This document shows positions 259 to 64,000 of a DNA stretch of 64,000 nucleotides, piece by piece. The notes below the pieces were generated by a model, which worked only from the letters and a program-made list of their open reading frames with translations, was not told the DNA's origin and ran no database searches. The stretch lies in NCBI GenBank assembly GCA_053919585.1, contig CM132826.1; one strand, given 5' to 3'. This DNA is from Euprymna scolopes. Lineage: Eukaryota. How positions within the stretch are numbered: the stretch's first letter is position 1; each line of letters starts with the position of its first letter. The translations under genes were made by a program, and so were the position numbers.

Positions 259-301
259 CTAGTCCAGATAAGAAAAGAGTTGTTGTCTTCCAAAATTAGA
301 T
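259..301 (-). CDS. Probable terminal coding exon E (Q-SNFGRQQLFSYLD*), followed by 3' UTR
   Basis: Acceptor cttctttttctttcAG. Continuing from phase 2 gives TAG at 261-259. AATAAA occurs downstream on the minus strand at ~75-80 and 5-10. Confidence 0.65.
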
Positions 302-520
302 CTGAAAGAAAAAGAAGTGAATTTGCTATGCAGCACTTTTTATAACATGGATGGTATCGCCCTCGAAATTACCAAAGGGGAGATAATTCAGTTTTGTAAA
401 CGCCCTCTAGTGAGAGTTTGTGTAATTGTGTATAGAAGGGGAGGCAATGCAACAACCTATATTTCATTTTTTTTTTTTTTTTTTTTCAAGATGAACATAT
501 TTATTTCAATATCACAGTGG

Positions 521-827
521 GGGTAGGATTAGATTAGACACAAAGATCAGGAAAGTGAAATTGGAAAGCCAGTGCTCTCGAGGAGGAGCACTCTGGCCTG
601 CAAAAAAATGCCTGGGAAGCCCTATATTCTCCATTAGGGGTGACTCAGATGATTAGTAATAAACTAATCCCTTCTCAAAGAAAGGAGACAAAACCTGAGA
701 GGGTAGATTGGATTAGACACAAGGATTGGAAAGCCAGCGCTCTCAAGGAGGAGCACTCTGGCCAGCAAAAAATGCCTGGGAAGCTCTGTATTCTTCATTA
801 GGTGTGCCTCAGGCGATTAGTAATAAA
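521..827 (-). mobile_element. Two tandem diverged copies of a probable retroelement (LINE/SINE) 3' end with a stem-loop and short TAATC-type tail
   Basis: Direct repeats at ~521-663 and ~701-827. Minus-strand hairpin GCCAG-AG-TGCTC/GAGCR-CTGGC, with a U-G pair in the second copy. Ends in TCTAATCYAATC. Family assignment is an inference. Confidence 0.45.
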
Positions 828-1100
828 GAAAGAACGCAAAGCTTGAGAGGATGGACCTCCTAGAACTGCACAGCACCAGCATTATACGGCATCAGTCGGA
901 AAAAGGTCATTACAAGAATAGTTTACACTCTTGATTTTGGTGCTAAAGTAAAAACCCCAACGGCGCCAAAATGCAAGATGTTAAAATCAATCATTGAAAT
1001 ATTTGTTATCTCCCTTACTTTGCCACCCTAAAGTAAAAATGTCAAAACAAAAAACAAAAAATAAAATGCCAACAACACACAGGAAAAATGGTGGACTTAC

Positions 1101-1246
1101 TGTGTTTCGTTAAATATCTTCTTTGTGGATTCCGACTGATTAACACCTGCTAAGACATTTTGGATGTAAGTAAAATACTCCTGCTGCAAAAGACTCAGAT
1201 TGCCTTTTCTGATTAAAGATTGCAGGTTTGTAGGTAATTTTGTCAA
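1101..1246 (-). CDS. Coding exon D (LTKLPTNLQSLIRKGNLSLLQQEYFTYIQNVLAGVNQSESTKKIFNET-)
   Basis: Acceptor tttgtttttgctttcAG and donor GTAAGT. 146 bp; only the phase-0 frame is open, matching exon C; ends in phase 2. Confidence 0.85.
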
Positions 1247-1351
1247 CTGAAAGCAAAAACAAAAAAATAAGATAAAAAAAATTCCCAGTAAAAAAATATA
1301 TAAAAAAAAAAATGAAAGGATGTTGTAGTTTGCTTGAAGCATTGTACGTAG

Positions 1352-1860
1352 TGTGAAAGGAGTTGTGTTTGAAGGCTATATCAATGCTGTTTGTGGGGAA
1401 CACCATGGACAAGTTAGAATATTAGAAGGAATGTTCAATAATATTACATTTATTTAGAGCTAAATGTTTTGGTTTCGATTCTAACTGATGGCATACATTT
1501 TTTTTTACTTTTGAAATCACTACTATATATTATGTTTAATATTATTATAATTTATTATAATCGATAGAGAATTGGATATATAATAATAAATACAAAATCT
1601 GCATGAATTAAAATATAATATTTAAGCGTAATGCCAGGCCGGCTGCTAATCGAATATAAAAATTAAAATAAAAAAAAACAACCAAAAATAGCTAACAAAA
1701 CTGAAAAATAAATAAATAAAATGTGAAAGGAGCTGTGTTTGAAGGCTATATTAATGTGGTTTGTAGGAAACACCGTGGACATGAGTTAGCATATAAAAGT
1801 ATAATGACAATATTAGTAAGAATTTTCAATAATTTTTAATTATATTACGTTTATTTACCA
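1352..1860. repeat. Diverged direct duplication (~1352-1455 and ~1723-1857)
   Basis: GTGAAAGGAGYTGTGTTTGAAGGCTATATYAATG..GTTTGT.GG.AACACCRTGGACA..AGTTAG.ATAT occurs in both. Confidence 0.85.
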
Positions 1861-2069
1861 ACATAATGTGTTGTACAAGATGGTAAGTGTTGATGTCCCT
1901 AATTTTCGAGAGTAGAATCTCCTCTTCAGGAGAGAAAATAAAAAGAAACATGTACAACGAGGCTTTTCTTTGTCTGTTTTATTTTTCATTTATTTATTTC
2001 TATTATTTATCATGGAAATTTATTTGACAGCCAGTCTGCGTCACGGACTTCCGCAAAAAAAAAAAAAAA

Positions 2070-2580
2070 TGATTTTATAGTACCAAACGATTGCATATGA
2101 TCACACCATTTTATAGGGCCATATAAAAGTCCATAATCTAATAGGGACTCATTAGGACTGAACGATTTTACAAGACCCACATGAAGAATACATAATTTTA
2201 TAGAACCGAATGATTTTATGTGATCACACAAAAAAATATTCATAATTTTATAAAGGCCACATTAAATATTCATAATTTTATAAAGGCCACATTAAATATT
2301 CACAATTTTATAGGACAAAATAATTTCATAAAGCTAGTTCAAAATATGAAATTTTATAGGCCCGAACGATTGTATATGGAATACGATTTTATAGGACTAC
2401 ATAAAAATTTATAATCTTATAGGACCACGTGAGAACCGAGAGATTTCATGGGATCCACATTTAAAAAAAATCATAATTTTATAACATTCATAATTTTATA
2501 ACATTCACAATTTTATAGGGCCGGACAAAATGTAAAACTTTATAGGATCATATAAAAATGTTTATAATTGTATAGGGCCA
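2070..2580. repeat. Degenerate ~30 bp minisatellite (CATAATTTTATARRGGCCACATTAAATATT-like)
   Basis: Recurrent ATTTTATAG/ATTTTATAA cores, with exact 30-bp copies at 2236-2310. Confidence 0.85.
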
Positions 2581-2650
2581 CCGATTAATAAATAATAAAC
2601 ATTAAAATAGACCAAATAAAAAGCAAACGTATTTAATTTTTATTATTATA

Positions 2651-3015
2651 CTAGCAGGGCTACCCGGCGTTGCTCGGGACCGTATAAACAATGAAAAAAC
2701 AAAAGCAGATATTGAACATATGTTTTATTCTTAGGGGAGAGGAATCTTTCATCTCAAGTTTTAGCGTTACAAACAAACATTTGTCTTTTATATATATAGA
2801 TAATGACAGGTTTTTTTGGGGGCCCCCCTCGAAGATAACTGATCAGTTGACCAACTTCTAGTGGTCCGTTTGACGTGAAATTTCGATATTTGTCATCCGG
2901 GTGATGGGGCTTCGATATGATACCAAATTTGTCAAGTTTGGTTCCGTCTTTCAAAAGTTTTAGCGTTACAAACAAACATACATACACACAGACGTTTGGC
3001 TTTTATATATATAGA
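2651..3015 (-). mobile_element. Short Helitron derivatives of the same family: mini-element 2651-2800 plus a 5'-terminal segment 2802-3015
   Basis: 2651-2755 is near-identical to 3016-3120 (hairpin + CTAG). TC-TATATATATAAAAG 5' ends at 2800 and 3015. 2802-3015 is homologous to 8936-9165. Confidence 0.75.
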
Positions 3016-4539
3016 CTAGCAGGGCTACCCGGCGTTGCTCGGGACCGTATAAACAATGAAAAAACAAAAGCAGATATTGAACATATGTTTGATTCTTAGG
3101 GGAGAGGAATCTTTCATCTCTATGTATTATTTGTTTTATCTACCCTAGGACTGATATTGTTCATGTTTTATCCCTAGCATAGGTAATTTACAGCATGTAT
3201 ATGAAATTGTTTTACCTTAGGGAGAAGAGAACAGGTAATATACAACATAATGTGTCTATATTACATCCCTGGCAACGCCTAGAAACCAGCTAGAACATGT
3301 ATTTCAGTCAATCTTTATTATATCCTGGGCTATGCCGGGAAACCAGCTAATCTCTTTTTAGTGACTTGACCACCAAAATACCTCCCTAAGTGTGTCCTTT
3401 CTTTTGAACTTATTAGATATAGGTATCTAGAAATGTGTGTGAAATTTGTTGAATGCATTGTTCACTATGATTTTCTTATTGTTCTACACAATATCAACTG
3501 TAGCGAAATAACACAGTAAACTTAGTGTAGTGTTAGAATAAAGAGCAAAGGAAAAAATTAGAATCATATTTTGTAATTGCAAATCTAAATTTGCTAGCAT
3601 GTACCAGTATTTGCCAGGTTGTGGAAATTTGGAACTTATAACATATGTAGTGGCCTTTTCCTAGATACCTATTGCTAAAAATTATACTTTCATTTTGTTA
3701 GAAAAATCTCTCTTCAGATGCCCTGCATCATTCAAAATAAAAACAAATATTTTTATAATTGTTTCAGTATATTGCTACACAATGTGAAAGTTTTTAACGT
3801 TTGTAAAAAAAATCATGAATGTGCTTATATTGCAAAAAAGAAAATATCAGTGCACAGTATTGAAAGTGTTTGAGATTCAAAAGTCTGTAACATTTCTACT
3901 AACTTCATAAGATGTCATGTGAGAAACTGAATTGAATATCAAGACATTATCTGAAGCGTTTTTATTTTGGTGTAACATATGTGTTTACAGTGAACCTTAA
4001 CTTTTAATAAACAGATTGGTATGCAATGACATAGGCTAAGAATCTTTAAAATATATATAAATTGGAAAAATGTGTGAACAAATGAAAAAAAAATGATCCG
4101 CTCCACTTGATGACATCAAGCACAGTAATATTTTAGTGAAGAAAATATGAAATTGATGTTCAGTGATTAGTTTGGATGAATGAGAAAATGTAATTGTTTG
4201 ATGCATAAAAATAACTCAGTTGCTGTATTTGATATTAAGCAGCAAAATATAGTGATTTGAATATTTGGGAAAACATCAAACCAGATTATGTAAAAAGAAA
4301 AAAAAAAAGATGAAATTAGAAAATATATATTTTATGTTTATGAGTTCTGCCAATCAAAATTTTGTGGCAGAAATTGGGTGATTACCATGCAATTTTATTT
4401 TGGTAAAATTCTTAAATTATTAGAATGTTTATTATAATTTCTAATTAGTGACTTGTTATAATCAAAATCCGCCCTAAAGAGTGTCCTTTCTTTTATTAGG
4501 TATCAGAGTAGGTATCAAGATTTCTACTTCTATACAAAT

Positions 4540-5193
4540 GTGATATTTCAGATCTGTACATAAAAAATTTGTTGAATATATAGGTTGAGAATTGTTCTGT
4601 GTCGCTCTCTCTCACACACACACGCATTCTCACTTTTATAGATATAATAGATAGATTACTCTAGATATATTTCCATATGTCTGAATACCCTATATACAAA
4701 TTTTCAAATCTGTAGATAAAAAAATTTGTTGAGTATATAGGTTGAAAATTGTTCTCTCTCTCTCTCTCACACACACATTCTCAATTTTAGAGATATAATA
4801 GATAGATTATGCTAGATATATTTCCATATGTCTGAATACCCTATATACAAATTTTCTAATCTGTAGATCAAATATTTGTTGAATATATAGGTTGAAAATT
4901 GTTCTTACTCTCTCTCTCTCTCTCTCTGGCTACCTCACACACACATTCTAACTTTTATAGATATAATAGATAGATTATGCTAGATATATTTCCATATGTG
5001 TGAATACCCTATATACAAATTTTCTAATTTGTAGATAAAAAATTTGTAGAGTGCATAGGTTGAGAATTGTTCTCTCTATCTCTCACACACACATTCTAAC
5101 TTTTAAAGATATAATAGATTATGCTAGATATATTTCGATATTTCTGAATACCCTATATATAAAAATTTGTTGAATGTATAGGTTGAGAACTGT

Positions 5194-5224
<31 letters not shown>

Positions 5225-5361
5225 CACACACACACATTCTCACTTTTATAGATATAATAGAAAGATTATCCTAGATATATTTCTATTTGTATGAATACTC
5301 TATATACAAATTTTAAAATCTGTAGATAAAGAATTTGTTGAGTATATGGGTTGAGAATTGT

Positions 5362-5402
<41 letters not shown>

Positions 5403-6143
5403 TTCTCACTTTTATAGATATAATAGATTATGCTAGATATATTTCCATATGTCTGAATACCCTATATACAAATTTTCAAATCTGTAGATAAAAAATTTGT
5501 TGAGTATATAGGTTGAGAATTGTTCTCTCTCTCTCTATCACACACATTCTCACTTTTATAGATATAATAGACAGATTATGCCAGATATATTGAAATATGT
5601 CTGAATGCCCAATATACAAATTTTGAAATCTGTAGATAAAAAATTTGTTGTATACATAGGTTGACAATTGTCCTCTCTCTCACACACACACACATTCTCA
5701 CTTTTATACATATAATAGATAGATTATGCTAGATATATTTCTATATGTCTGAACACCCTATATACAAATGTTCAAATCTGTGGATAAAAAATTTGTTGAA
5801 TGTATAGGTTGAGAATTTTTATCTCTCTCTTTTTCTCTCTCTCTCTCTCGCTATCTCACACACACGCATTCTCACTTTTATAGATAAAATAGATAGATTA
5901 TGCTAGATATATTTCCATATGTCTGAATACCCTATATACAAAGTTTCAAATCTGTAGATAAAAAATTTGTTGAATATATAGGTTTAGAATTGTTCTCTCT
6001 CTCTCTCTCACACACACATTCTAACTTTTGTAGTTATAATAGATAGATTATGCTAGATATATTTCCATATGTCTGAATACCCTATATACAAATTTTCTAA
6101 ACTGTAGGTAAAAAATTTGTTGAGTATGTAGGTTAAGAATTGT

Positions 6144-6180
<37 letters not shown>

Positions 6181-6684
6181 AGTTCTCACTTTTATAGATA
6201 TAATAGATAGATTATGCTAGATATATTTCTATATGTCTGCCTACCCTATATACAAATTTCCAAATCTGTGCCCAAAAATGTGTGGAATATATAGGTTGAG
6301 AATTGTTCTCTCTCTCTCTCTCTCTCTCTCACACATATTCTCACTTTTATAGGTTATATAGGTTGAGAATTTTTTGCTCTTTCCATCACTCACATTCACA
6401 CTTTTATAGATATAATACATAGATTATGCCAGATATATTTACATATGTCTGAATACCCAATATACACATTTTCAAATCTGTAGATAAAAAATTAGTTGAA
6501 TATATAGGTTGAGAATTGTTCTCTCTCTCTCTCTTTCTCTCTCTCTCACACACACATTCTCACTTTTATAGATATAATAGATAGATTATGCTAGATATAT
6601 TTCCATATGTCTGAATACCCTATATACAAATTTTCTAATCGGTAGATAAAAAATTTGTTGAATATATAGGGTGAGAATTGTACT

Positions 6685-6723
<39 letters not shown>

Positions 6724-7188
6724 GCACACATTCTCACTTTTATGGATATAATAGATAGATTATGCTGGATATATTTCCATATGTCTGAATACCCTATATA
6801 CAAATGGTCAAATCTGTAGATAACAAATTTATTGAATAGATAGGTTGAGAATTGTTCTCTCTCTCTCTCTCGCAACCTTACACACACAACCACACGCAAA
6901 CATTCTGACTTTTATAGATATAATAGATCGATTATGCTAGATATATTTCCATATGTCTGAATACCCAATATACAAATTTTCAAATCTGTAGGTAAAAAAT
7001 TTGTTGAATATATAGGTTGAGAATTGTTCTCTCTCTCTCACACACTCACATTCTCACTTTTATAGATATAATGTATAGATTATGCTAGATATATTTCTAT
7101 ATGTCTGAATACCCTATATACAAAGTTTAAAATCTGTAGATAAAAATACGTTGAGTATATAGGTTGAGAATTGTTCTCTCTCTCTCTT

Positions 7189-7230
<42 letters not shown>

Positions 7231-7354
7231 TTTCACTTTTATAGATATAATAGATAGATTATGCTAGATATATTTCCATATGTCTGAATACCCTATATAC
7301 AAATTTTCAAATCTGTAGATAAAAAATGTATTGAATATATAGGTTGAGAATTGT

Positions 7355-7409
<55 letters not shown>

Positions 7410-7570
7410 CTACCTCACACACACACACATTTTCACTTTTATAGATATAATAGATAGATTATGCTAGATATATTTCCATATGTCTGAATACCCTATATAC
7501 AAACTTTCAAATCTGTAGATAAAAAATTTGTTGAGTATATAGGTTGAGAATTGTTCTCTCTCTCTCACAC
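4540..7570. repeat. Tandem array of ~18 units of ~150-190 bp, each with a (CT)n(CA)n microsatellite, inside the Helitron
   Basis: Recurrent CATATGTCTGAATACCCTATATACAAATTTTCAAATCTGTAGATAAAAAATTTGTTGARTATATAGGTTGAGAATTGTT(CT)n(CA)nTTCTCACTTTTATAGATATAATAGATAGATTATGCTAG. Confidence 0.97.
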
Positions 7571-7659
7571 GAAACTGTGCGCTCGGCTTCTTCCCCCCCT
7601 TCCCACCCCAAATGCTTGGGAAACTGTGCACTGTTTTTGTTGGTTTTCAAGCTGCCTCT

Positions 7660-7975
7660 TCCCCCCCCCCACACACACACACAGTTTAACAGTAGTAGGA
7701 GGTCAAGAGAAAGAGGGTGAGAGAGAGAGAAGAGTAAGTTGGTGAGAGAGAGAGAAAAGAGAAAGAGGGTGTTGGTTTTATATTTTTATTATCGTCTAAT
7801 ATTTTGAAAGCTGAATTTCTAATAAAATGTGCATCTATAGGAGATAATGCCTGGGAATGTGTTCCCCCCCCCCACAGTTTAACAGTGGTGTGACGTCAAG
7901 AGAAAGAGGGTGAGAGAGAGGGAAGAGTAAGTGGGTGAGAGAGAGAAAAAAAAGAAAGACGGTGTTGGTTTTGTG
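7660..7975. repeat. Two diverged direct copies of a C-tract/GA-rich module (~7660-7780 and ~7864-7973)
   Basis: Shared CCCCCCCCC..ACAGTTTAACAGT..GTCAAGAGAAAGAGGGTGAGAGAGAG..AAGAGTAAGT.GGTGAGAGAG..GGTGTTGGTTTT. Confidence 0.85.
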
Positions 7976-7998
7976 AAAAAAGTTGTTATTTACAATTG

Positions 7999-8190
7999 TT
8001 CGCATTCTTGGCCTTTTGGTCAAGATCAAAGTGTAGTATCTGTTCTTCAGATGCTGCACTTCTATTTCTTGTTCTCTTTCGGTGGAGGAGAAATCCGCCA
8101 CGACTGAGACAATTTTTATTTTTGTACCTTTTCTCCACGTTAAAAAACGACCCTGGTGTCTAACTCTGTCCCGTGGGGAGGCATAGTAAA
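7999..8190 (+). ncRNA. U2: U2 snRNA-like sequence (variant or pseudogene); confident core 7999-8047
   Basis: TTCGCATTCTTGGCCTTTTGGTCAAGATCAAAGTGTAGTATCTGTTCTT closely matches the U2 5' end, including the GTAGTA branch-site recognition motif. Downstream are an Sm-like AATTTTTATTTTTG (8111-8124) and CTCCACG..CGACCCTGGT, reminiscent of the U2 3' domain. The 3' extent is uncertain. Confidence 0.75.
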
Positions 8191-8733
8191 TAGGTACAAT
8201 TGTTCGCCATTAGTGGATGTTGACGTCACGTCACGTGACATGACTAAGCGTTTTTTTTTTTTAGTATGAATAACATTTTTTGTTATAATTATAAAGTCTA
8301 CACTTAATTTTATAGAAAATGATGTATATATAATAGAAAAAAAAAATTACTGGTTTTGTTGGATTCAAGTGGATCCCCCCCCCTCCAGTTTAAGAGATAG
8401 CAGGTCACGTGGTAATATACAAAATGGCTAGCGTAAATATAAAGATCGGTTTTTTTATCGACGAATATTTTGAAAGCTGAATTTTTTTTTATTCCTGTAC
8501 ATTTTTTCCTGATATTTTTCGTTAAAACTCTTGTATAAATACTATTTTTAACCAGTTAAATACGTTGGAGACATTGTCATGGAGTTTAATAATCTCTTGA
8601 ACAAAGCAGAAGAGAAATTACAAAAGTATCGGTAAAACAAAGTGTTTGTTTACATTTGTTCGCCATTACTGGATGTTGACGTCACGTCACGTGACATGAC
8701 TAAGCGTTTTTGGATTATGTAATATTAACATTT

Positions 8734-9100
8734 AAATGACAGGTTTTTTGGGGGGCCCCCCTAGGAGAGAAATGATCAGTTCACCCCCTTTTAATGGTCC
8801 GTTTGGTGTGGAATTTCGATATTTGTCATGCGGGTGATCAAGGTTCAATATGATACATAATTTGTCAACTTTGGTTGTGTCTGTCAAAAGTTTGAGCTGA
8901 CGTCACGTCACGTGACACGTATTGAATAACGTTAAAATGACAGGTTTTTTGGGGGGCCCCCCTAGGAGAAAAACGATCAGTTGACCCCTTTCTACTGGTC
9001 CGTTTGACGTGAAATTTCGATATTTGTCATCCGGGTGATCAAGGTGCAATATGATACCAAATTTGTCAACTCTGGTTCCGTCTTTCAAAAGTTTTAGCGT
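8734..9100. repeat. ~200 bp tandem duplication of the Helitron subterminal segment containing the GGGGGGCCCCCC palindrome
   Basis: AAATGACAGGTTTTTTGGGGGGCCCCCCTAGGAGA... at ~8734 and ~8936, with a third copy at ~2802. Confidence 0.9.
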
Positions 9101-9338
9101 TACAAACAAACATACATACATACATACATACATACACACCGATTTTTGCCTTTTATATATATAGATGTTTTACAGTTTTGTATACTATTCAGACGAAATA
9201 TATTTATTTGAAAGACAAAGTTACTTTAAAACGCAAACATTTAGTAACATTTGGTGGTGAGCCGTATGAATTCTTTTGATGGGCCACATACAGATTGTGA
9301 GCAATAGTTTGGCCACACCATGTCTAAACGATGCTTAC

Positions 9339-9491
9339 CTGTAGTAGTTCACGTGCCTGTTGGTATCCCTCTGTTAGCAGATCACTCTCACATATTAAAC
9401 TATGAACTTGGTTCATTGCAGATAATTCGGGGCCATCATTGTAAGAGGAGATCAATTTGCACAAAATTGATTTCAAGTGGATGCCAATCAC
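9339..9491 (-). CDS. Coding exon C (VIGIHLKSILCKLISSYNDGPELSAMNQVHSLICESDLLTEGYQQARELLQ)
   Basis: Acceptor ctatttttttcgtAG and donor CAG|GTAAGC. 153 bp, open in phase 0/0; an island of complex sequence among repeats. Confidence 0.85.
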
Positions 9492-9494
9492 CTA

Positions 9495-11140: not shown

Positions 11141-11650
11141 GGGGTTAGCTTAGGGCTAGTTTAGGGTTAGGTTAGGGTTAGTTCAGGGTTAATTTAGCAT
11201 TAATTTAGTGCTGATTTAGGTTAGTTAGAGTTAATTTAGAATTATTAAATTTAATTCAGGGTTGATTTAAGTTACGTTGGGGTTAGGTTAAGGTTAATTT
11301 AGGGTCAAGCTTGGATTATTTAAGAGTTATTTTAGGGTCGATTTGAGGTTAGCTTTAAGAAACTATTCTTGTTCAGTTCAAAAGCTGTACCAGTACCTAA
11401 GTTAGTTTAGGGCTAGCTTAGGGTTAGTTTAGGGTTAGGTTAATTTATGGTTAGTTTAGGGCTAGTTTAGGGTTAATTTAGGATTATTTAAGATTAAATT
11501 AGATTTAATTTAGGATTGATTTAAGCTACATTGGGGTTGGTTAATTTAGGGTTAGGCTAGGATTATTTAAAAGTTATTTTAAGGTTGATTCGAGGTTAGC
11601 TTTAAGAAACAGTTTGTTTTTGTTCGATTAAAAAGCTGTACCAGTACCCA
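11141..11650 (+). repeat. Degenerate TTAGG(G)-like repeats arranged as two ~250 bp direct copies
   Basis: TTAGGGTTAGGTTAGGGTTAG-type runs. Both copies end in GAGGTTAGCTTTAAGAAAC...AAAAGCTGTACCAGTACC (to ~11398 and ~11648). Confidence 0.85.
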
Positions 11651-11680
11651 AGTCTTTCTAATCGCAATAAAACTTTTTAC

Positions 11681-11802
11681 CTGGAATGGATCCTGAGTAA
11701 TGGCTTTGTAGATGTCAAAGTTTTGTTGATTGAGTAGATGTTTCATGATTCGGTCGAGATTTTCTGATCCAGAGAAAATATCCGGGAGCATTGCTGTAAT
11801 AT
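11681..11802 (-). CDS. Coding exon B (D-ITAMLPDIFSGSENLDRIMKHLLNQQNFDIYKAITQDPFQ)
   Basis: Acceptor ttgttttttgtttAG and donor CAG|GTAAAA. 122 bp, phase 1 to 0, inside ORF-track 11579..11791. Confidence 0.8.
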
Positions 11803-11999
11803 CTAAACAAAAAACAATGCAAATGATAGAGCTGTGTGCGAGATGACGTCACGGCAAGGAGAAAGGAAAAAGATTATACAAAAAGAATGACGTGCGTAGA
11901 ACGATGATTAGATCAGAGAAGGGTGTATTCGACAGGTATTCTGAAAATCATGTCAGAGAAGGACAGAGACAGACATGTTATGCACGGTAGCTGATAGTA

Positions 12000-53900: not shown

Positions 53901-56900
53901 GAACATTGCTGAAATAACTAAACGAAAAAACAATAACCTTGAATGATTGGAAATTGGGCTTTCTGTATTTTTTTTTTAAAAGAGAAAATATCCGAGAACA
54001 TTGCTGAAATAACTAAACGAAAAAACAATAACCTTGAATGATTGGAAATTTGGCTTTCTGTATTTTTTTTAAAAGAGAAAATATCCGAGAACATTGCTGA
54101 AATAACTAAACGAAAAAACAATAACCTTGAATGATTGGAAATTTGGCTTTCTGTATTTTTTTTTTTAAAGAGAAAATATCCGAGAACATTGCTGAAATAA
54201 CTACACGAAAAAACAATAACCTTGAATGATTGGAAATTGAGCTTTCTGTATTTTTTTTAAAGAGAAAATATCCGAGAACATTGCTGAAATAACTAAACGA
54301 AAAAACAATAACCTTGAATGATTGGAAATTGGGCTTTCTGTATTTTTTTTTAAAGAGAAAATATCCGAGAACATTGCTGAAATAACTAAACGAAAAAACA
54401 ATAACCTTGAATGATTGGAAATTCAGCTTTCTGTATTTTTTTTTAAAAGAGAAAATATCCGAGAACATTGCTGAAATAACTACACGAAAAAACAATAACC
54501 TTGAATGATTGGAAATTGGGCTTTCTGTATTTTTTTTTAAAGAGAAAATATCCGAGAACATTGCTGAAATAACTAAACGAAAAAACAATTACCTTGAATG
54601 ATTGGAAATTGAATTTTCCGTATTTTTTTTTAAAGAGAAAATATCCGAGAACATTGCTGAAATAACTAAACGAAAAAAAACAATAACCTTGAATGATTGG
54701 AAATTGGGCTTTCTGTATTTTTTTTTTAAAAGAGAAAATATCCGAGAACATTGCTGAAATAACTAAACGAAAAAACAATAACCTTGAATGATTGGAAATT
54801 GAGCTTTCTGTATTTTTTTTAAAAGAGAAAATATCCGAGAACATTGCTGAAATAACTAAACGAAAAAACAATAACCTTGAATGATTGGAAATTGGGCTTT
54901 CTGTATTTTTTTTAAAAGAGAAAATATCCGAGAACATTGCTGAAATAACTAAACGAAAAAACAATTACCTTGAATGATTGGAAATTGGTCTTTCTGTATT
55001 TTTTTTTTTAAAGAGAAAATATCCGAGAACATTGCTGAAATAACTAAACGAAAAAACAATAACCTTGAATGATTGGAAATTGGGCTTTCTGTATTTTTTT
55101 TTTAAAAGAGAAAATATCCGAGAACATTGCTGAAATAACTAAACGAAAAAACAATAACCTTGAATGATTGGAAATTTGGCTTTCTGTATTTTTTTTAAAA
55201 GAGAAAATATCCGAGAACATTGCTGAAATAACTAAACGAAAAAACAATAACCTTGAATGATTGGAAATTTGGCTTTCTGTATTTTTTTTTTTAAAGAGAA
55301 AATATCCGAGAACATTGCTGAAATAACTACACGAAAAAACAATAACCTTGAATGATTGGAAATTGAGCTTTCTGTATTTTTTTTAAAGAGAAAATATCCG
55401 AGAACATTGCTGAAATAACTAAACGAAAAAACAATAACCTTGAATGATTGGAAATTGGGCTTTCTGTATTTTTTTTTAAAGAGAAAATATCCGAGAACAT
55501 TGCTGAAATAACTAAACGAAAAAACAATAACCTTGAATGATTGGAAATTCAGCTTTCTGTATTTTTTTTTAAAAGAGAAAATATCCGAGAACATTGCTGA
55601 AATAACTACACGAAAAAACAATAACCTTGAATGATTGGAAATTGGGCTTTCTGTATTTTTTTTTAAAGAGAAAATATCCGAGAACATTGCTGAAATAACT
55701 AAACGAAAAAACAATTACCTTGAATGATTGGAAATTGAATTTTCCGTATTTTTTTTTAAAGAGAAAATATCCGAGAACATTGCTGAAATAACTAAACGAA
55801 AAAAAACAATAACCTTGAATGATTGGAAATTGGGCTTTCTGTATTTTTTTTTTAAAAGAGAAAATATCCGAGAACATTGCTGAAATAACTAAACGAAAAA
55901 ACAATAACCTTGAATGATTGGAAATTGGGCTTTCTGTATTTTTTTTTAAAGAGAAAATATCCGAGAACATTGCTGAAATAACTAAACGAAAAAACAATAA
56001 CCTTGAATGATTGGAAATTGAGCTATCTGTATTTTTTTTAAAAGAGAAAATATCCGAGAACATTGCTGAAATAACTAAACGAAAAAACAATAACCTTGAA
56101 TGATTGGAAATTGGGCTTTCTGTATTTTTTTTAAAAGAGAAAATATCCGAGAACATTGCTGAAATAACTAAACGAAAAAACAATTACCTTGAATGATTGG
56201 AAATTGGTCTTTCTGTATTTTTTTTTTAAAGAGAAAATATCCGAGAACATTGCTGAAATAACTAAACGAAAAAACAATAACCTTGAATGATTGGAAATTG
56301 GGCTTTCTGTATTTTTTTTAAAAGAGAAAATATCCGAGAACATTGCTGAAATAACTAAACGAAAAAACAATAACCTTGAATGATTGGAAATTGGGCTTTC
56401 TGTATTTTTTTTTTAAAAGAGAAAATATCCGAGAACATTGCTGAAATAACTAAACGAAAAAACAATAACCTTGAATGATTGGAAATTGGGCTTTCTGTAT
56501 TTTTTTTTAAAGAGAAAATATCCGAGAACATTGCTGAAATAACTAAACGAAAAAACAATAACCTTGAATGATTGGAAATTGAGCTTTCTGTATTTTTTTT
56601 AAAAGAGAAAATATCCGAGAACATTGCTGAAATAACTAAACGAAAAAACAATAACCTTGAATGATTGGAAATTGGGCTTTCTGTATTTTTTTTAAAAGAG
56701 AAAATATCCGAGAACATTGCTGAAATAACTAAACGAAAAAACAATTACCTTGAATGATTGGAAATTGGTCTTTCTGTATTTTTTTTTTTAAAGAGAAAAT
56801 ATCCGAGAACATTGCTGAAATAACTAAACGAAAAAACAATAACCTTGAATGATTGGAAATTGGGCTTTCTGTATTTTTTTTAAAAGAGAAAATATCCGAG

Positions 56901-59900
56901 AACATTGCTGAAATAACTAAACGAAAAAACAATAACCTTGAATGATTGGAAATTGGGCTTTCTGTATTTTTTTTTTAAAAGAGAAAATATCCGAGAACAT
57001 TGCTGAAATAACTAAACGAAAAAACAATAACCTTGAATGATTGGAAATTGGGCTTTCTGTATTTTTTTTTAAAGAGAAAATATCCGAGAACATTGCTGAA
57101 ATAACTAAACGAAAAAACAATAACCTTGAATGATTGGAAATTGAGCTTTCTGTATTTTTTTTAAAAGAGAAAATATCCGAGAACATTGCTGAAATAACTA
57201 AACGAAAAAACAATAACCTTGAATGATTGGAAATTGGGCTTTCTGTATTTTTTTTAAAAGAGAAAATATCCGAGAACATTGCTGAAATAACTAAACGAAA
57301 AAACAATTACCTTGAATGATTGGAAATTGGTCTTTCTGTATTTTTTTTTTTAAAGAGAAAATATCCGAGAACATTGCTGAAATAACTAAACGAAAAAACA
57401 ATAACCTTGAATGATTGGAAATTGGGCTTTCTGTATTTTTTTTAAAAGAGAAAATATCCGAGAACATTGCTGAAATAACTAAACGAAAAAACAATAACCT
57501 TGAATGATTGGAAATTGGGCTTTCTGTATTTTTTTTTTAAAAGAGAAAATATCCGAGAACATTGCTGAAATAACTAAACGAAAAAACAATAACCTTGAAT
57601 GATTGGAAATTGGGCTTTCTGTATTTTTTTTTAAAGAGAAAATATCCGAGAACATTGCTGAAATAACTAAACGAAAAAACAATAACCTTGAATGATTGGA
57701 AATTGAGCTTTCTGTATTTTTTTTAAAAGAGAAAATATCCGAGAACATTGCTGAAATAACTAAACGAAAAAACAATAACCTTGAATGATTGGAAATTGGG
57801 CTTTCTGTATTTTTTTTAAAAGAGAAAATATCCGAGAACATTGCTGAAATAACTAAACGAAAAAACAATTACCTTGAATGATTGGAAATTGGTCTTTCTG
57901 TATTTTTTTTTTTAAAGAGAAAATATCCGAGAACATTGCTGAAATAACTAAACGAAAAAACAATAACCTTGAATGATTGGAAATTGGGCTTTCTGTATTT
58001 TTTTTAAAAGAGAAAATATCCGAGAACATTGCTGAAATAACTAAACGAAAAAACAATAACCTTGAATGATTGGAAATTGGGCTTTCTGTATTTTTTTTTT
58101 AAAAGAGAAAATATCCGAGAACATTACTGAAATAACTAAACGAAAAAACAATAACCTTGAATGATTGGAAATTGGGCTTTTTGTATTTTTTTTTAAAGAG
58201 AAAATATCCGAGAACATTGCTGAAATAACTAAACGAAAAAACAATAACCTTGAATGATTGGAAATTGAGCTTTCTGTATTTTTTTTAAAAGAGAAAATAT
58301 CCGAGAACATTGCTGAAATAACTAAACGAAAAAACAATAACCTTGAATGATTGGAAATTGGGCTTTCTGTATTTTTTTTAAAAGAGAAAATATCCGAGAA
58401 CATTGCTGAAATAACTAAACGAAAAAACAATTACCTTGAATGATTGGAAATTGGTCTTTCTGTATTTTTTTTTTTAAAGAGAAAATATCCGAGAACATTG
58501 CTGAAATAACTAAACGAAAAAACAATAACCTTGAATGATCGGAAATTGGGCTTTCTGTATTTTTTTTTTAAAAGAGAAAATATCCGAGAACATTGCTGAA
58601 ATAACTAAACGAAAAAACAATAACCTTGAATGATTGGAAATTTGGCTTTCTGTATTTTTTTTAAAAGAGAAAATATCCGAGAACATTGCTGAAATAACTA
58701 AACGAAAAAACAATAACCTTGAATGATTGGAAATTTGGCTTTCTGTATTTTTTTTTTTAAAGAGAAAATATCCGAGAACATTGCTGAAATAACTACACGA
58801 AAAAACAATAACCTTGAATGATTGGAAATTGAGCTTTCTGTATTTTTTTTAAAGAGAAAATATCCGAGAACATTGCTGAAATAACTAAACGAAAAAACAA
58901 TAACCTTGAATGATTGGAAATTGGGCTTTCTGTATTTTTTTTTAAAGAGAAAATATCCGAGAACATTGCTGAAATAACTAAACGAAAAAACAATAACCTT
59001 GAATGATTGGAAATTCAGCTTTCTGTATTTTTTTTTAAAAGAGAAAATATCCGAGAACATTGCTGAAATAACTACACGAAAAAACAATAACCTTGAATGA
59101 TTGGAAATTGGGCTTTCTGTATTTTTTTTTAAAGAGAAAATATCCGAGAACATTGCTGAAATAACTAAACGAAAAAACAATAACCTTGAATGATTGGAAA
59201 TTGAGCTTTCTGTATTTTTTTTAAAGAGAAAATATCCGAGAACATTGCTGAAATAACTAAACGAAAAAACAATAACCTTGAATGATTGGAAATTGGGCTT
59301 TCTGTATTTTTTTTTAAAGAGAAAATATCCGAGAACATTGCTGAAATAACTAAACGAAAAAACAATAACCTTGAATGATTGGAAATTCAGCTTTCTGTAT
59401 TTTTTTTAAAGAGAAAATATCCGAGAACATTGCTGAAATAACTACACGAAAAAACAATAACCTTGAATGATTGGAAATTGAGCTGTCTGTATTTTTTTTT
59501 AAAGAGAAAATATCCGAGAACATTGCTGAAATAACTAAACGAAAAAACAATTACCTTGAATGATTGGAAATTGAATTTTCCGTATTTTTTTTTAAAGAGA
59601 AAATATCCGAGAACATTGCTGAAATAACTAAACGAAAAAACAATAACCTTGAATGATTGGAAATTGGGCTTTCTGTATTTTTTTTTTAAAAGAGAAAATA
59701 TCCGAGAACATTGCTGAAATAACTAAACGAAAAAACAATAACCTTGAATGATTGGAAATTGGGCTTTCTGTATTTTTTTTTTTAAAGAGAAAATATCCGA
59801 GAACATTGCTGAAATAACTAAACGAAAAAACAATAACCTTGAATGATTGGAAATTGAGCTTTCTGTATTTTTTTTTTTAAAGAGAAAATATCCGAGAACA

Positions 59901-62660
59901 TTGCTGAAATAACTAAACGAAAAAACAATTACCTTGAATGATTGGAAATTGAATTTTCCGTATTTTTTTTTAAAGAGAAAATATCCGAGAACATTGCTGA
60001 AATAACTAAACGAAAAAACAATAACCTTGAATAATTGGAAATTGGGCTTTCTGTATTTTTTTTTTAAAGAGAAAATATCCGAGAACATTGCTGAAATAAC
60101 TAAACGAAAAAACAATAACCTTGAATGATTGGAAATTGAGCTTTCTGTATTTTTTTTTTAAAGAGAAAATATCCGAGAACATTGCTGAAATAACTAAACG
60201 AAAAAACAATAACCTTGAATGATTGGAAATTGGGCTTTCTGTATTTCTTTTTAAAGAGAAAATATCCGAGAACATTGCTGAAATAACTAAACGAAAAAAC
60301 AATAACCATGAATGATTGGAAATTGAGCTTTCTGTATTTTTTTTTTAAAGAGAAAATATCCGAGAACATTGCTGAAATAACTAAACGAAAAAACAATAAC
60401 CTTGAATGATTGGAAATTGAGCTTTCTGTATTTTTTTAAAAGAGAAAATATCCGAGAACATTGCTGAAATAACTAAACGAAAAAACAATAACCTTGAATG
60501 ATTGGAAATTGAGCTGTCTGTATTTTTTTAAAAGAGAAAATATCCGAGAACATTGCTGAAATAACTAAACGAAAAAACAATAACCTTGAATGATTGGAAA
60601 TTGAGCTTTTTGTATTTTTTTTTAAAGAGAAAATATCCGAGAACATTGCTGAAATAACTAAACGAAAAAACAATAACCTTGAATGATTGGAAATTGGGCT
60701 TTCTGTATTTTTTTTTAAAGAGAAAATATCCGAGAACATTGCTGAAATAACTAAACGAAAAAACAATAACCTTGAATGATTGGAAATTGGGCTTTCTGTA
60801 TTTTTTTTTAAAGAGAAAATATCCGAGAACATTGCTGAAATAACTAAACGAAAAAACAATAACCTTGAATGATTGGAAATTCAGCTTTCTGTATTTTTTT
60901 TTAAAAGAGAAAATATCCGAGAACATTGCTGAAATAACTACACGAAAAAACAATAACCTTGAATGATTGGAAATTGGGCTTTCTGTATTTTTTTTTAAAG
61001 AGAAAATATCCGAGAACATTGCTGAAATAACTAAACGAAAAAACAATAACCTTGAATGATTGGAAATTGAGCTTTCTGTATTTTTTTTAAAGAGAAAATA
61101 TCCGAGAACATTGCTGAAATAACTAAACGAAAAAACAATAACCTTGAATGATTGGAAATTGGGCTTTCTGTATTTTTTTTTAAAGAGAAAATATCCGAGA
61201 ACATTGCTGAAATAACTAAACGAAAAAACAATAACCTTGAATGATTGGAAATTCAGCTTTCTGTATTTTTTTTAAAGAGAAAATATCCGAGAACATTGCT
61301 GAAATAACTACACGAAAAAACAATAACCTTGAATGATTGGAAATTGGGCTTTCTGTATTTTTTTTTAAAGAGAAAATATCCGAGAACATTGCTGAAATAA
61401 CTAAACGAAAAAACAATTACCTTGAATGATTGGAAATTGAATTTTCCGTATTTTTTTTTAAAGAGAAAATATCCGAGAACATTGCTGAAATAACTAAACG
61501 AAAAAACAATAACCTTGAATGATTGGAAATTGGGCTTTCTGTATTTTTTTTTTAAAAGAGAAAATATCCGAGAACATTGCTGAAATAACTAAACGAAAAA
61601 ACAATAACCTTGAATGATTGGAAATTGGGCTTTCTGTATTTTTTTTTTTAAAGAGAAAATATCCGAGAACATTGCTGAAATAACTAAACGAAAAAACAAT
61701 AACCTTGAATGATTGGAAATTGAGCTTTCTGTATTTTTTTTTTAAAGAGAAAATATCCGAGAACATTGCTGAAATAACTAAACGAAAAAACAATTACCTT
61801 GAATGATTGGAAATTGAATTTTCCGTATTTTTTTTTAAAGAGAAAATATCCGAGAACATTGCTGAAATAACTAAACGAAAAAACAATAACCTTGAATGAT
61901 TGGAAATTGGGCTTTCTGTATTTTTTTTTTAAAGAGAAAATATCCGAGAACATTGCTGAAATAACTAAACGAAAAAACAATAACCTTGAATGATTGGAAA
62001 TTGAGCTTTCTGTATTTTTTTTTTAAAGAGAAAATATCCGAGAACATTGCTGAAATAACTAAACGAAAAAACAATAACCTTGAATGATTGGAAATTGGGC
62101 TTTCTGTATTTCTTTTTAAAGAGAAAATATCCGAGAACATTGCTGAAATAACTAAACGAAAAAACAATAACCATGAATGATTGGAAATTGAGCTTTCTGT
62201 ATTTTTTTTTTAAAGAGAAAATATCCGAGAACATTGCTGAAATAACTAAACGAAAAAACAATAACCTTGAATGATTGGAAATTGAGCTTTCTGTATTTTT
62301 TTAAAAGAGAAAATATCCGAGAACATTGCTGAAATAACTAAACGAAAAAACAATAACCTTGAATGATTGGAAATTGAGCTGTCTGTATTTTTTTAAAAGA
62401 GAAAATATCCGAGAACATTGCTGAAATAACTAAACGAAAAAACAATAACCTTGAATGATTGGAAATTGAGCTTTTTGTATTTTTTTTTAAAGAGAAAATA
62501 TCCGAGAACATTGCTGAAATAACTAAACGAAAAAACAATAACCTTGAATGATTGGAAATTGGGCTTTCTGTATTTTTTTTTAAAGAGAAAATATCCGAAA
62601 ACATTGCCGAAATAACTAAACGAAAAAACAATAACCTTGAATGATTGGAAATTGAGCTTT
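12000..62660. repeat. Satellite array, ~540 monomers of 92-95 bp (consensus GGAAATTGRGCTTTCTGTA T8-11 AAA(A)GAGAAAATATCCGAGAACATTGCTGAAATAACTAAACGAAAAAACAATAACCTTGAATGATT)
   Basis: Directly visible uninterrupted head-to-tail repeats. Length varies mostly in the T/A tract. Copy number is span divided by ~93.4. Confidence 0.99.
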
Positions 62661-63109
62661 TTTAAAAAATTTTTTTATATCCATCTGTCCTAGGTAGAAA
62701 GTACTGTTGGAGAGCTAAATGTTTTGGTTTCGATTTTAGCTGATGGCACCCAAGGCGTACATATTTTTAAAAAAAACTTTTCAAATCAGCGTTTAGGAAC
62801 CTCTACAGTGATAGATCAAATGGTAATATTTGAAATGGCTTTAGAATCCAGTCTACCCTACTATTTAGTTTTTAGTTTGAAAGAAGATAAATTCATACTT
62901 TTGACCTGGGTATTAAATGAAAGTGATTGGGGTTTCCTTCTATTATATATGCGCTGCAGCCGATTGTCAAATGTGTTCTTCAGGCTATTTAATTTTAAAA
63001 AATTATTTAATTTTTAAAAATCAACCTTTCTGATTGTCTCGATATATACACTTGTTGGCAATAATAAAACATACACAGCTGGTTATAAAAATATTTTGTT
63101 TATTCTTAT

Positions 63110-63330
63110 TCTTAGAACTACACGCCTGTGGAACTCTGTTCCGTCTGCCTGCTTCCCTCCTGACTACAACATCGATGTCTTCAAGTCCAACGTAAACAAA
63201 TTCCTGATGAACCGCCCCCTTAAGTAGACACTTTAAATATCCTCACTAACGTACTGTACTTACAATAACCCTTATCCCCGAGTGGCTTCCGGGCCTTGAT
63301 AAGTGTTAACCACCTTGTAAAAAAAAAAAA
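63110..63330 (+). mobile_element. 5'-truncated non-LTR retrotransposon (CR1/Jockey-like) 3' end with poly(A) tail
   Basis: Translates as LRTTRLWNSVPSACFPPDYNIDVFKSNVNKFLMNRPLK*, the RLWNxLP..FP..Y....FK motif typical of LINE ORF2 C-termini. Followed by a ~90 nt UTR and an A-run at ~63319-63331. Confidence 0.85.
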
Positions 63331-63344
63331 ATAAAATAAAATAA

Positions 63345-63520
63345 CATTTTCGGTTTCTGAATAACAGTTTTGACATTAGTGATGGCGTGCGTGGCGGAGG
63401 TGTCGTGTGGAGAAGAATGTGTTGCTTAGCTAACCTGTCGTAGTTGCTCTCCTTTTTCTTTGTTGTCTGTCATCTCTTTTATCGGCCCAGACGACGTCAA
63501 CAATCATGCAGTATTTTAAA
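63345..63520 (-). pseudogene. Possible highly degraded mariner transposase fragment
   Basis: With frameshifts the minus strand gives RR...G*LSN / ILLH / HDTSATHAITNVKTVIQK, loosely like the ILLHDNARPH region. Confidence 0.3.
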
Positions 63521-63744
63521 AATGTGGGGTCAATCTCACTGATTCTACGTCCTATATCTTGACCTCCTTTGATGTCAGAATCTGGGGCCCCCAGGCTTCC
63601 GATTAACTTTTCTTTGATCTCACTCGCCGGGGATCTGGATTATCCAACACTTTTGGACTAGTATCACTATCAAAGTCTGCTAGTCCTGACTACCCTACTA
63701 TTTTAATCATAGAGTATGTGGCTTTTACTTCTCTTTATACTCAC

Positions 63745-63803
63745 CACTGTCATTTGCTGATGAGAGCAGAAGATTTGACAACAAATTTTGTATCATGGCT
63801 GAG
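63745..63803 (-). CDS. Internal coding exon A of an unidentified host gene (x-SAMIQNLLSNLLLSSANDS-G)
   Basis: Acceptor cttttctattttcAG and donor GTGAGT. 59 bp, open, ends in phase 1, which matches the start of exon 11681-11802 (G+AT = Asp). Confidence 0.75.
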
Positions 63804-63890: not shown

Positions 63891-64000
63891 TACGAGATAC
63901 CTCAACAAGTTTCCAGACTTTTTTTTTTGAATAAACACTTTTATAGATAGTACACACATGAAACTTTAGTCCCTCTCGAAGTAATCTCCTCCGGCTGCAA
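63891..64000 (-). mobile_element. Tc1/mariner element 3' end (terminal repeat plus transposase C-terminus), running off the window
   Basis: Minus strand 64000-63966 reads (I)AAGGDYFERD*, like the mariner C-terminal CIxxxGDYFE motif. TA-CGAG...AAGTTTCCAGACTTTT resembles a mariner terminus. Confidence 0.8.

What the first reader, a model, noticed from the sequence alone, without database searches (positions are those of the whole stretch)
259..63803. Hidden five-exon gene spans the window; the 50 kb satellite lies in one of its introns
Seen: five minus-strand segments with canonical AG/GT sites whose phases chain without a break (2-1, 1-0, 0-0, 0-2, 2-stop) into ~170 aa of non-repetitive protein, which I do not recognise. 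Inference: the intron 11803-63744 is ~52 kb and ~97% satellite, i.e. satellite-driven intron gigantism, a phenomenon known from Drosophila Y fertility genes.
Basis: partly seen in the sequence, partly recalled or inferred. Interest (0 to 1): 0.7.

Follow-up and report, generated by a model that had tools for sequence, protein, structure and literature searches.

The report
Satellite-filled intron inside ABCA transporter gene
The predicted exons are real and are spliced across a 52-kb intron made almost entirely of one satellite repeat, but they are internal exons of a very large ABCA lipid-transporter-type gene of a cephalopod, not a small five-exon gene.

Summary
These are E1/E2 (63745/11802, across the satellite), E2/E3 (11681/9491) and E3/E4 (9339/1246). 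The phase chain holds.

The "five-exon, ~170 aa" model is wrong in extent. The same contigs carry about 1.9 kb of transcript upstream of E1 and at least 4.3 kb downstream of E3. E5 and its stop codon are untested and probably not part of the main mRNA.

Downstream on the same strand lie exons homologous to ABCA transporters:
- the end of the first extracellular domain (ECD1), matching ABCA1 residues 545-630, at window -86 and -91 kb;
- the NBD1 Walker A exon at -129 kb;
- the NBD2 Walker A exon at -211 kb.

E1-E4 are therefore most likely part of a long, poorly conserved ECD1. This link is inferred, not shown by RNA.

Intron 1 is 51,942 nt, and 97.5% of it is 542 copies of a 93-bp satellite found nowhere else in the 5.9-Gb genome. 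Each unit carries a 49-bp, 90%-identical copy of the intron's own acceptor plus the first 32 nt of exon 2.

The array has about 530 acceptor-like sites and no consensus donor, so exon definition probably keeps it silent. The fly Y-gene comparison is only a loose analogy.

The parts
63745..63803 (-). Exon E1 (59 nt), an internal coding exon. Only frame 1 is open. The ATG at 63796 is probably an internal Met, not the start codon.
   Evidence: frames, acceptor and donor; the loose end at 11803 in X1 and X10 equals the 3' end of E1. At least 238 nt (X1 record 6) and about 1944 nt (X10 record 9) of transcript lie upstream of it.
11803..63744 (-). Intron 1, 51,942 nt with GT..AG ends, removed as mapped.
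   Evidence: E1/E2 junction in two studies; length and satellite share of 0.975.
12000..62660 (-). Locus-specific 93-bp satellite, 542 monomers, about 2 differences per monomer from the consensus. On the sense strand it has about 530 acceptor-like TTTAG, 0 GTAAG/GTGAG and 4 canonical polyA hexamers.
   Evidence: Genome-wide counts equal window counts (394 = 394; 542 = 542).
11771..11818 (-). The authentic acceptor (16 nt of intron including the AG) plus the first 32 nt of exon 2. This is the 48-nt segment that is copied, with one extra base, as 49 bp at 90% identity in every satellite monomer.
   Evidence: local score 40 against a shuffle maximum of 22.
11819..11999 (-). 181-bp unique spacer between the array and the authentic acceptor, with no detectable similarity to the monomer.
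11681..11802 (-). Exon E2 (122 nt).
   Evidence: contigs X1 record 6 and X10 record 9; joint to E3.
9492..11680 (-). Intron 2 (2,189 nt), rich in minisatellites whose unit resembles the E3 acceptor.
   Evidence: joint 'skips 2189' in X1 and X10.
9339..9491 (-). Exon E3 (153 nt, 51 codons), single copy in the genome.
1247..9338 (-). Intron 3 (8,092 nt).
   Evidence: the loose end at 9339 equals the first 30 nt of E4. (length).
1101..1246 (-). Exon E4 (146 nt); its 5' junction is confirmed, its 3' junction is untested.
259..301 (-). Unverified, and probably not in the productive mRNA.
   Evidence: frame. It has no GT before the stop. Contig lengths and the ABCA exons downstream argue against it.

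Best explanation
The window lies inside one very large gene on the minus strand of a cephalopod chromosome-scale contig.

Shown:
- E1-E4 are real exons, joined in polyA/oligo-dT RNA from two studies exactly as predicted, including the join across the 52-kb intron.
- That intron is 97.5% a 93-bp satellite that exists only at this locus.
- Each monomer contains a 90% copy of the intron's own 3' splice site and the first 32 nt of exon 2.
- An ABCA-subfamily transporter is encoded downstream on the same strand. Its exons are ECD1 C-terminal exons at -86 and -91 kb, NBD1 at -129 kb and NBD2 at -211 kb.

Inferred:
- E1-E4 encode part of the long, fast-evolving, N-glycosylation-sequon-rich first extracellular domain (ECD1) of that ABCA protein. 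This would explain why they have no detectable homologues.
- The satellite arose in place from a short local duplicate of the acceptor/exon-2 boundary that then amplified and homogenised.
- RNA polymerase II reads through the whole array, and the spliceosome ignores the roughly 530 decoy acceptors. The array contains no consensus 5' splice site, so no decoy can be paired with a downstream donor into an exon (exon definition). Only the last, authentic acceptor has a donor 122 nt downstream.
- The near absence of polyA hexamers likewise lets transcription run through.
For: Splicing: (joint 9489->11679 with cut +2; loose ends at 9339 and 11803; X1 and X10 come from different studies).

Coding:
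- a unique open frame per exon, chaining in phase.
- chance of the chain about 1e-3.
- The three RNA-versus-reference differences (9384, 11726, 11738) all fall on third codon positions and are synonymous (my calculation).

Transcript size: table 8 (E2 at 2004-2128 of 5731 nt; E3 at 31-181 of 4524 nt).

ABCA identity:
- two Walker-A matches on the C44 minus strand, 82 kb apart. This is the same paired layout as the ABCA-like pairs on C3, C20 and C41.
- the NBD1 exon's best PDB hits are ABCA3/7/1, E about 1e-12.
- the exon at -90886..-90701 hits only ABCA7/1/4/3, E 9e-5, aligned to ABCA1 573-630.
- the exon at -86.4 kb aligns to ABCA1 545-571 and is in phase with the next exon.
- no ABCA N-terminal-type exon between -100 and +164 kb.
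- the first protein-like, phase-compatible exon after E4 is at -12331..-12452.

Satellite:
- 542 copies, about 2 differences per unit.
- and 43/44: every genome-wide match lies in this window.
- 49-bp homology, score 40 against a shuffle maximum of 22.
- 0 GTAAG/GTGAG and 4 polyA hexamers, against 61 and 130 in an equal length of flanking sense sequence.
Against: - No RNA evidence links E4 to the ABCA exons; the link rests on strand, order, distance and contig lengths.
- E1-E4 and the other candidate ECD1 exons have no significant similarity to any ABCA ECD1 or to anything else.
- The array is separated from the authentic acceptor by 181 bp of unrelated sequence, and the other 44 bp of the monomer have no identified source. 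The birth-in-place scenario is therefore incomplete.
- The direction of copying (exon to satellite, or satellite to exon) is not settled.
- Contigs cannot exclude rare use of decoy acceptors.
- The array's length was not checked against long reads.
Confidence: 0.8

Rival explanations
1. One reading: a stand-alone five-exon gene. Translation starts at the ATG in E1 (63796) and stops in exon 5 (261-259), giving a protein of about 170 aa of unknown family.
For: - If E1 ran on upstream unspliced, an in-frame TGA would lie 27 nt before the ATG.
- Exon 5 has a strong acceptor.
- AATAAA motifs lie about 190-250 nt after the stop.
- No homologue of the peptide pieces was found.
Against: -: about 1.9 kb of transcript lies upstream of E1 and at least 4.3 kb downstream of E3. 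A 170-aa ORF would then sit in an mRNA of at least 6.6 kb with very long UTRs.
- E1 has a strong acceptor with a TACTGAT branch-like motif upstream.
- ABCA exons follow on the same strand.
- A phase-compatible, protein-like next exon exists at -12.3 kb.
Confidence: 0.07
2. E1-E4 belong to a separate large gene that ends between the window and -86 kb. The ABCA gene starts downstream of it.
For: No RNA link was obtained between E4 and the ABCA exons. The window's exons have no similarity to ABCA ECD1.
Against: - An ABCA1/4/7-like protein needs at least 540 residues (TM1 plus ECD1) upstream of the exon at -86.4 kb.
- With the intron sizes seen here (2-52 kb), these residues would not fit alongside the 3' end of another gene of over 4 kb in 86 kb.
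- No ABCA N-terminal motif was found there.
- The candidate exons at -12, -38 and -41 kb have the same composition as E1-E4.
Confidence: 0.1
3. The direction of copying is the reverse. The satellite came first, and the present acceptor and first 32-39 nt of exon 2 were recruited from intronic, monomer-like sequence. The ancestral acceptor would be the in-frame TTTTCTCTGGATCAG 39 nt downstream.
For: - The homology ends exactly upstream of a second plausible acceptor, 39 nt (13 codons) into E2.
- All four exonic differences between E2 and the monomer change the amino acid (my reading), so there is no sign of constraint shared by the copies.
Against: - Two of the differences are C in E2 against T in the satellite, the common mutational direction away from an E2-like ancestor.
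- No monomer retains E2-like states.
- The array is not contiguous with E2; a 181-bp spacer intervenes.
- None of these points is decisive.
Confidence: 0.25
4. The array, or its length, is an assembly artefact (an expanded or misplaced repeat).
For: A 50-kb, 97%-identical array is hard to assemble. No long-read check could be made here.
Against: - The RNA junction shows that E1 and E2 are adjacent exons in the same orientation.
- Monomer lengths and variants differ region by region along the array.
- Both array edges are clean and unique.
- The motif occurs nowhere else, so the repeats cannot have been imported from another locus.
Confidence: 0.08

Closest known systems
ABCA-subfamily full ABC transporters with an enlarged N-terminal extracellular region (ABCA12/ABCA13 type; ABCA13 has 5058 aa with a long N-terminal region, PMC7948424)
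   Same: - Two nucleotide-binding-domain exons sit in tandem on one strand.
- NBD1 is closest to ABCA3/7/1.
- The ECD1 C-terminal segment is collinear with ABCA1 545-630.
- The ECD1-end exons lie further into the mRNA than in ABCA1: at least 2 kb of transcript precedes E2, and E2-E4 plus further exons still precede the ECD1 end.
   Different: Orthology to a particular ABCA member was not tested. The transmembrane domains and N-terminus were not located. The link of E1-E4 to this gene is inferred.
Satellite-containing gigantic introns of Drosophila Y-linked fertility genes (kl-3, kl-5; PMC6508621, PMC11207136)
   Same: An intron of an expressed gene consists almost entirely of tandem satellite DNA. 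It must be transcribed through and spliced out.
   Different: - Size is 52 kb here, not hundreds of kb to Mb.
- The unit is a complex 93-bp sequence, unique to the locus, not a simple genome-wide satellite.
- There is no evidence of sex linkage, testis specificity or a dedicated expression programme.
- Other 20-50-kb intronic satellites are noted in this genome.
Intronic decoy (pseudo) splice sites silenced by exon definition (PMC2095810); intronic minisatellites linked to splicing decisions in C. elegans (PMC4039745)
   Same: Many good matches to a splice-site motif lie inside an intron and are not used. Repeats are built from splice-signal-like sequence.
   Different: Here the decoys are about 530 near-identical tandem copies of the authentic acceptor itself, with part of its exon. 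No regulatory effect is known.

Membership tests
ABCA subfamily of ABC transporters | Two nucleotide-binding domains (Walker A) in one gene on one strand | tested here: met
   C44 minus strand, 47176819 and 47094519, 82 kb apart; exon translations with ...LLGQNGAGKTTT and GVNGAGKTTTFKILTG.
ABCA subfamily of ABC transporters | NBD1 closest to ABCA members rather than other ABC subfamilies | tested here: met
   the top hits are ABCA3, ABCA7 and ABCA1 (E 9e-13 to 5e-11), ahead of ABCF and LptB.
ABCA subfamily of ABC transporters | Large first extracellular domain ending in the conserved segment before TM2 (ABCA1 545-630) | tested here: met
   E 6e-4, ABCA1 545-571; E 9e-5, ABCA1 573-630; all 13 hits are ABCA. 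The two exons are in phase.
ABCA subfamily of ABC transporters | The window's exons E1-E4 are part of the same transcript as the ABCA exons | tested here: inconclusive
   Same strand, same order, 87 kb from E4 to the nearest ABCA exon (92 kb to the ECD1-end exon), and at least 4.3 kb of transcript after E3.
ABCA subfamily of ABC transporters | Transmembrane domains (ABC2_membrane_3) and an N-terminal TM1 | not tested
   The region 47177000-47206000 and the sequence beyond +164 kb could not be fetched. The PF12698 genome search scored only 19 of 65,866 candidates.
Satellite-driven intron gigantism (Drosophila Y type) | Intron made mostly of tandem satellite and still spliced | tested here: met
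   (97.5% satellite; junction in two RNA studies).
Satellite-driven intron gigantism (Drosophila Y type) | Intron hundreds of kb to Mb, orders of magnitude above the genome's typical introns | tested here: not met
   The intron is 51,942 nt, against 2,189 and 8,092 nt for the two confirmed neighbouring introns and about 13,430 nt for the next one if the inferred exon after E4 is right. Definition taken from PMC6508621 and PMC11207136.
Satellite-driven intron gigantism (Drosophila Y type) | Y-linked or germline-specific expression programme | not testable with these tools
   Run metadata are coded. No tissue or sex information was available.
Recursive (ratchet) splice sites | Acceptor directly followed by a consensus donor (AG|GTAAGT/GTGAGT) | tested here: not met
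   0 GTAAG/GTGAG in the 50.7-kb array. Only a weak AAG|GTTATT occurs, 480 times.

The most novel reading that the evidence does not exclude
The array of about 530 copies of the authentic acceptor is not neutral. It could act on the host ABCA pre-mRNA as a local sink or landing pad for 3'-splice-site factors (U2AF or polypyrimidine-tract binders). Alternatively it could act as a delay element, tuning the timing or efficiency of intron-1 removal and hence expression. The same process could be at work in intron 2, whose minisatellite also mimics its own acceptor.
Probability: 0.07. Interest if true: 0.75.

Novelty: new variant of a known kind. Interest (0 to 1): 0.45.

Why it matters
It gives RNA-backed annotation for part of a large cephalopod ABCA gene whose variable extracellular domain no sequence search used here could recognise.

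It also documents a clean natural experiment in splice-site choice. Hundreds of near-perfect tandem copies of an acceptor sit upstream of the real one, in an array that lacks any donor motif, and the assembled mRNA joins the flanking exons exactly.

It shows too that satellite-bloated introns occur outside fly Y chromosomes at a more modest scale, and that such a satellite can be built from its host intron's own splice signal.

Tried and rejected
- Exons were searched one by one, by reference.
- Word search with E3: blank.
- Full HMMER search with E3: only three hits, all tandem-repeat proteins whose scores add up over repeats. Rejected as spurious; there was no self or orthologue hit.
- Pfam: blank on the exon pieces and on candidate exons. 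On 147 minus-strand ORFs of at least 71 aa within +-100 kb it found only transposon families (HTH_48, RVT_1, GIY-YIG) and weak chance hits.
- ESM Atlas with a 105-aa candidate exon: citrate-synthase clusters at 0.88-0.89 with low recognition. Rejected.
- PDB sequence search with E3, E4 and two candidate exons: nothing.
- PF12698 search of the genome: too few candidates were scored to be informative.
- A strict ABCA NBD1 Walker-A pattern (GHNGAGKTT) missed C44. The looser NGAGK[ST]T pattern found it.
- The idea that the monomer's other 44 bp derive from the rest of exon 2, or that the 181-bp spacer is decayed monomers: no similarity above shuffles.
- The idea that similar ORFs at +137 kb and +157 kb are duplicated exons: they are 218-280-bp dispersed repeats in both orientations.
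- Weak internal similarity among candidate exons (z 3.4-3.6 for 2 of 45 pairs): not treated as evidence.
Full report
**Setting**

The window is G000:C44:47306001-47370000 of a 5.9-Gb, 925-contig assembly. It contains no N. Public runs that hold the stretch are labelled mollusc or invertebrate, and earlier notes of this scan call the genome a cephalopod.

**The observation**

- E1 63803-63745
- E2 11802-11681
- E3 9491-9339
- E4 1246-1101
- E5 301-259

Each has a pyrimidine-rich AG acceptor, and E1-E4 have GT(A/G)AG donors. Each of E1-E4 is open in exactly one frame, and those frames chain through the exon lengths as stated. E5 then ends at a TAG. Sampling random non-satellite minus-strand segments of the same lengths from 264 kb around the window gives the probability that the prescribed frame is open as 0.386, 0.173, 0.115 and 0.129 for E1-E4. 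The product is about 1e-3.

**RNA evidence**

One read-laying run was allowed, so I laid four runs from four studies on window 9200-11990. All runs are Logan contigs, which show joins but not levels.

Two RNA libraries gave long sense-strand contigs: X1 (oligo-dT, study P1) and X10 (polyA, study P4). Both show:
- the joint 9489->11679, 'skips 2189, CT..AC, cut +2', i.e. the GT..AG intron 9492-11680 on the minus strand;
- at 9339, a loose end whose reverse complement is the first 30 nt of E4;
- at 11803, a loose end whose reverse complement is the last 30 nt of E1. Base 11803 is ambiguous because the G of the acceptor equals the last G of E1.

So three of the four predicted junctions, including the one across the satellite, are confirmed in two independent studies. 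The E4/E5 junction lies outside the stretch and is untested.

The contigs differ from the reference at 9384, 11726 and 11738. By my calculation from the exon frames, all three are third-position synonymous transitions (AGT>AGC Ser, CAA>CAG Gln, CAT>CAC His). This weakly supports selection on this reading frame.

**The gene is much larger than the model**

- In X10 record 9 (5731 nt), E2 is at 2004-2128 and E3 at 2129-2279.
- In X1 record 1 (4524 nt), E3 is at 31-181.
- X1 record 6 carries 297 nt upstream of E2.

Hence about 1.9 kb of transcript precedes E1 and at least 4.3 kb follows E3 (table 8). E1 is therefore an internal exon. It has a strong acceptor with a TACTGAT motif 22 nt upstream.

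With AATAAA motifs about 190-250 nt further on, it could only end a short transcript. That does not fit either contig.

**What the gene is**

The exon pieces, searched one by one by reference, match nothing.
- Pfam: nothing.
- Word search with E3: nothing.
- Full HMMER search with E3: three spurious tandem-repeat proteins.
- PDB: nothing.
- E3 is single-copy in the genome.

I fetched 100 kb on each side. Further minus-strand ORFs there have strong splice sites and the same character: leucine-rich, many N-x-S/T sequons, paired cysteines. This style suggested an ABCA extracellular domain, which was a lead from memory and not evidence.

I tested the lead with a back-translated Walker-A pattern (NGAGK[ST]T). 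It gave 23 genome matches. Two are on the C44 minus strand, at 47176819 and 47094519, which is 129 and 211 kb downstream of the window and 82 kb apart. This is the same paired layout as on C3, C20 and C41.
- The first exon reads ...LDFYKGEITTLLGQNGAGKTTT. Its best PDB matches are the NBD1 of ABCA3, ABCA7 and ABCA1 (E 9e-13 to 5e-11).
- The second reads GVNGAGKTTTFKILTG.

Motif scans of the fetched flank then found two further exons:
- one at window -90886..-90701, whose 13 PDB hits are all ABCA7/1/4/3 (E 9e-5, aligned to ABCA1 573-630);
- one at about -86.4 kb aligned to ABCA1 545-571 (E 6e-4).

These two exons are in phase.

So an ABCA-type full transporter runs on the same strand, and the conserved end of its first extracellular domain lies about 87-92 kb downstream of E4. 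Such a protein needs its TM1 and the rest of ECD1 (about 540 residues in ABCA1) upstream of that point.
- No ABCA N-terminal-type exon occurs between -100 and +164 kb.
- The first protein-like exon that accepts E4's phase is at -12331..-12452.

I conclude, by inference and with about 85-90% confidence, that E1-E4 encode part of an enlarged, poorly conserved ECD1 of this ABCA gene. In an ABCA context, exon 5's stop would truncate the protein inside ECD1.

**The intron and its satellite**

Intron 1 is 51,942 nt. The array 12000-62660 makes up 97.5% of it.

The array has 542 monomers of 90-95 bp (mode 93), differing from the consensus by about 2 positions each. Most of that variation is in the A-run length and one GCCC/GCTC site.

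It is unique to this locus:
- a 34-mer from the monomer occurs 394 times in the genome and 394 times in the window;
- a 23-nt core motif with up to one mismatch occurs 542 times in both.

Positions 18-66 of the monomer are 90% identical to window 11818-11771, i.e. the last 16 nt of the intron (with the AG) plus the first 32 nt of exon 2. The local score is 40, against a maximum of 22 in 300 shuffles.

The rest of exon 2 and the 181-bp spacer between array and acceptor show nothing above chance. The other 44 bp of the unit therefore have no known source. No monomer keeps the E2 states at four of the five diagnostic sites; at the fifth, one monomer of 542 has the E2-like C.

**How it most likely works**

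On the sense strand the array has 530 TTTAG. It has no GTAAG or GTGAG and only 4 AATAAA/ATTAAA. An equal length of flanking sense sequence has 61 and 130 respectively.

The decoy acceptors thus have no donor to pair with for 50 kb. Only the authentic acceptor has one, 122 nt downstream. Under exon definition (established knowledge; PMC2095810) this is enough to explain why the mRNA joins E1 to the true E2.

Lack of polyA signals explains read-through. These two mechanistic steps are inferred. Contigs cannot exclude rare decoy use.

There is no recursive-splice motif in the unit.

**Comparison with the known**

The Drosophila kl-3 and kl-5 introns are megabase-scale and part of a special spermatocyte programme (PMC6508621, PMC11207136). 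This intron is about 6-24 times the two confirmed neighbouring introns, 8,092 and 2,189 nt. This scan's notes list other 20-50-kb intronic satellites in the same genome.

The new aspect is that the unit is a copy of the host intron's own acceptor and exon start.

**Verdict**

Exons 1-4 and the satellite-filled intron are real. The gene model and the fly analogy are overstated. The gene is ordinary (ABCA family). The satellite's origin from a splice acceptor is a modestly novel variant of a known phenomenon.

Noticed in passing
window 9492-11140 (minus strand): Intron 2 is packed with minisatellites (19-bp unit x14 at 10870-11135; 121-bp unit x3.2 at 9805-10189). Their GCTACTATTTTTTGTAA-type unit is a variant of the E3 acceptor tract (…GCTACTATTTTTTTCGTAG|G). 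So two consecutive introns of this gene carry arrays resembling their own 3' splice site.
   Followed up: partly
window 12000-62660 (minus strand): The 93-nt monomer is 31 codons long and lacks stops in two of the three sense frames. One of these is the frame of exon 2 (ISAMFSDIFS against ITAMLPDIFS). The array therefore yields ORFs of up to 291 aa, which automatic gene callers could mistake for a repetitive protein.
   Followed up: partly
window 63900-64000 and L003:126-485 (minus strand): A mariner-type transposase remnant lies just upstream of E1, in the sense orientation. Its C-terminal ...DYFERD* sits at the window's end, with a 120-aa ORF beyond it. One ORF of the flank set hit Pfam HTH_48 (1.7e-6), but I did not check which one.
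   Followed up: no
window 4546-7566: Intron 3 holds a 148-200-bp tandem repeat (about 20 copies in several registers, 76-91% matches) that includes CT/CA microsatellite tracts.
   Followed up: no
window 9384, 11726, 11738: RNA contigs differ from the reference at three exon positions. All three are synonymous third-position transitions. 9384 is seen in both X1 and X10; the other two in X10 only. These look like population or strain differences rather than editing, but no matched DNA was available.
   Followed up: partly
G000:C3:89473497/89554239; C20:85179897/85243626; C41:67594184/67633785: Three further pairs of same-strand Walker-A matches lie 40-81 kb apart. They are probably three more ABCA-type full transporters in this genome. 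The C41 pair lies beside the only scored PF12698 hit.
   Followed up: no
window -16722..-13130 (L006, minus strand): A retroelement sits in the intron after E4, in the sense orientation. It has a 751-aa pol-like ORF plus 191-aa and 268-aa ORFs. RVT_1 and GIY-YIG families were hit among the flank ORFs.
   Followed up: no
window +131000..+160000 (L012-L015): A 218-280-bp dispersed repeat occurs in both orientations at 77-94% identity. Some copies carry a protein-like ORF (…KLYEPNSQLDSVKLNF…) that could be mistaken for duplicated exons.
   Followed up: partly
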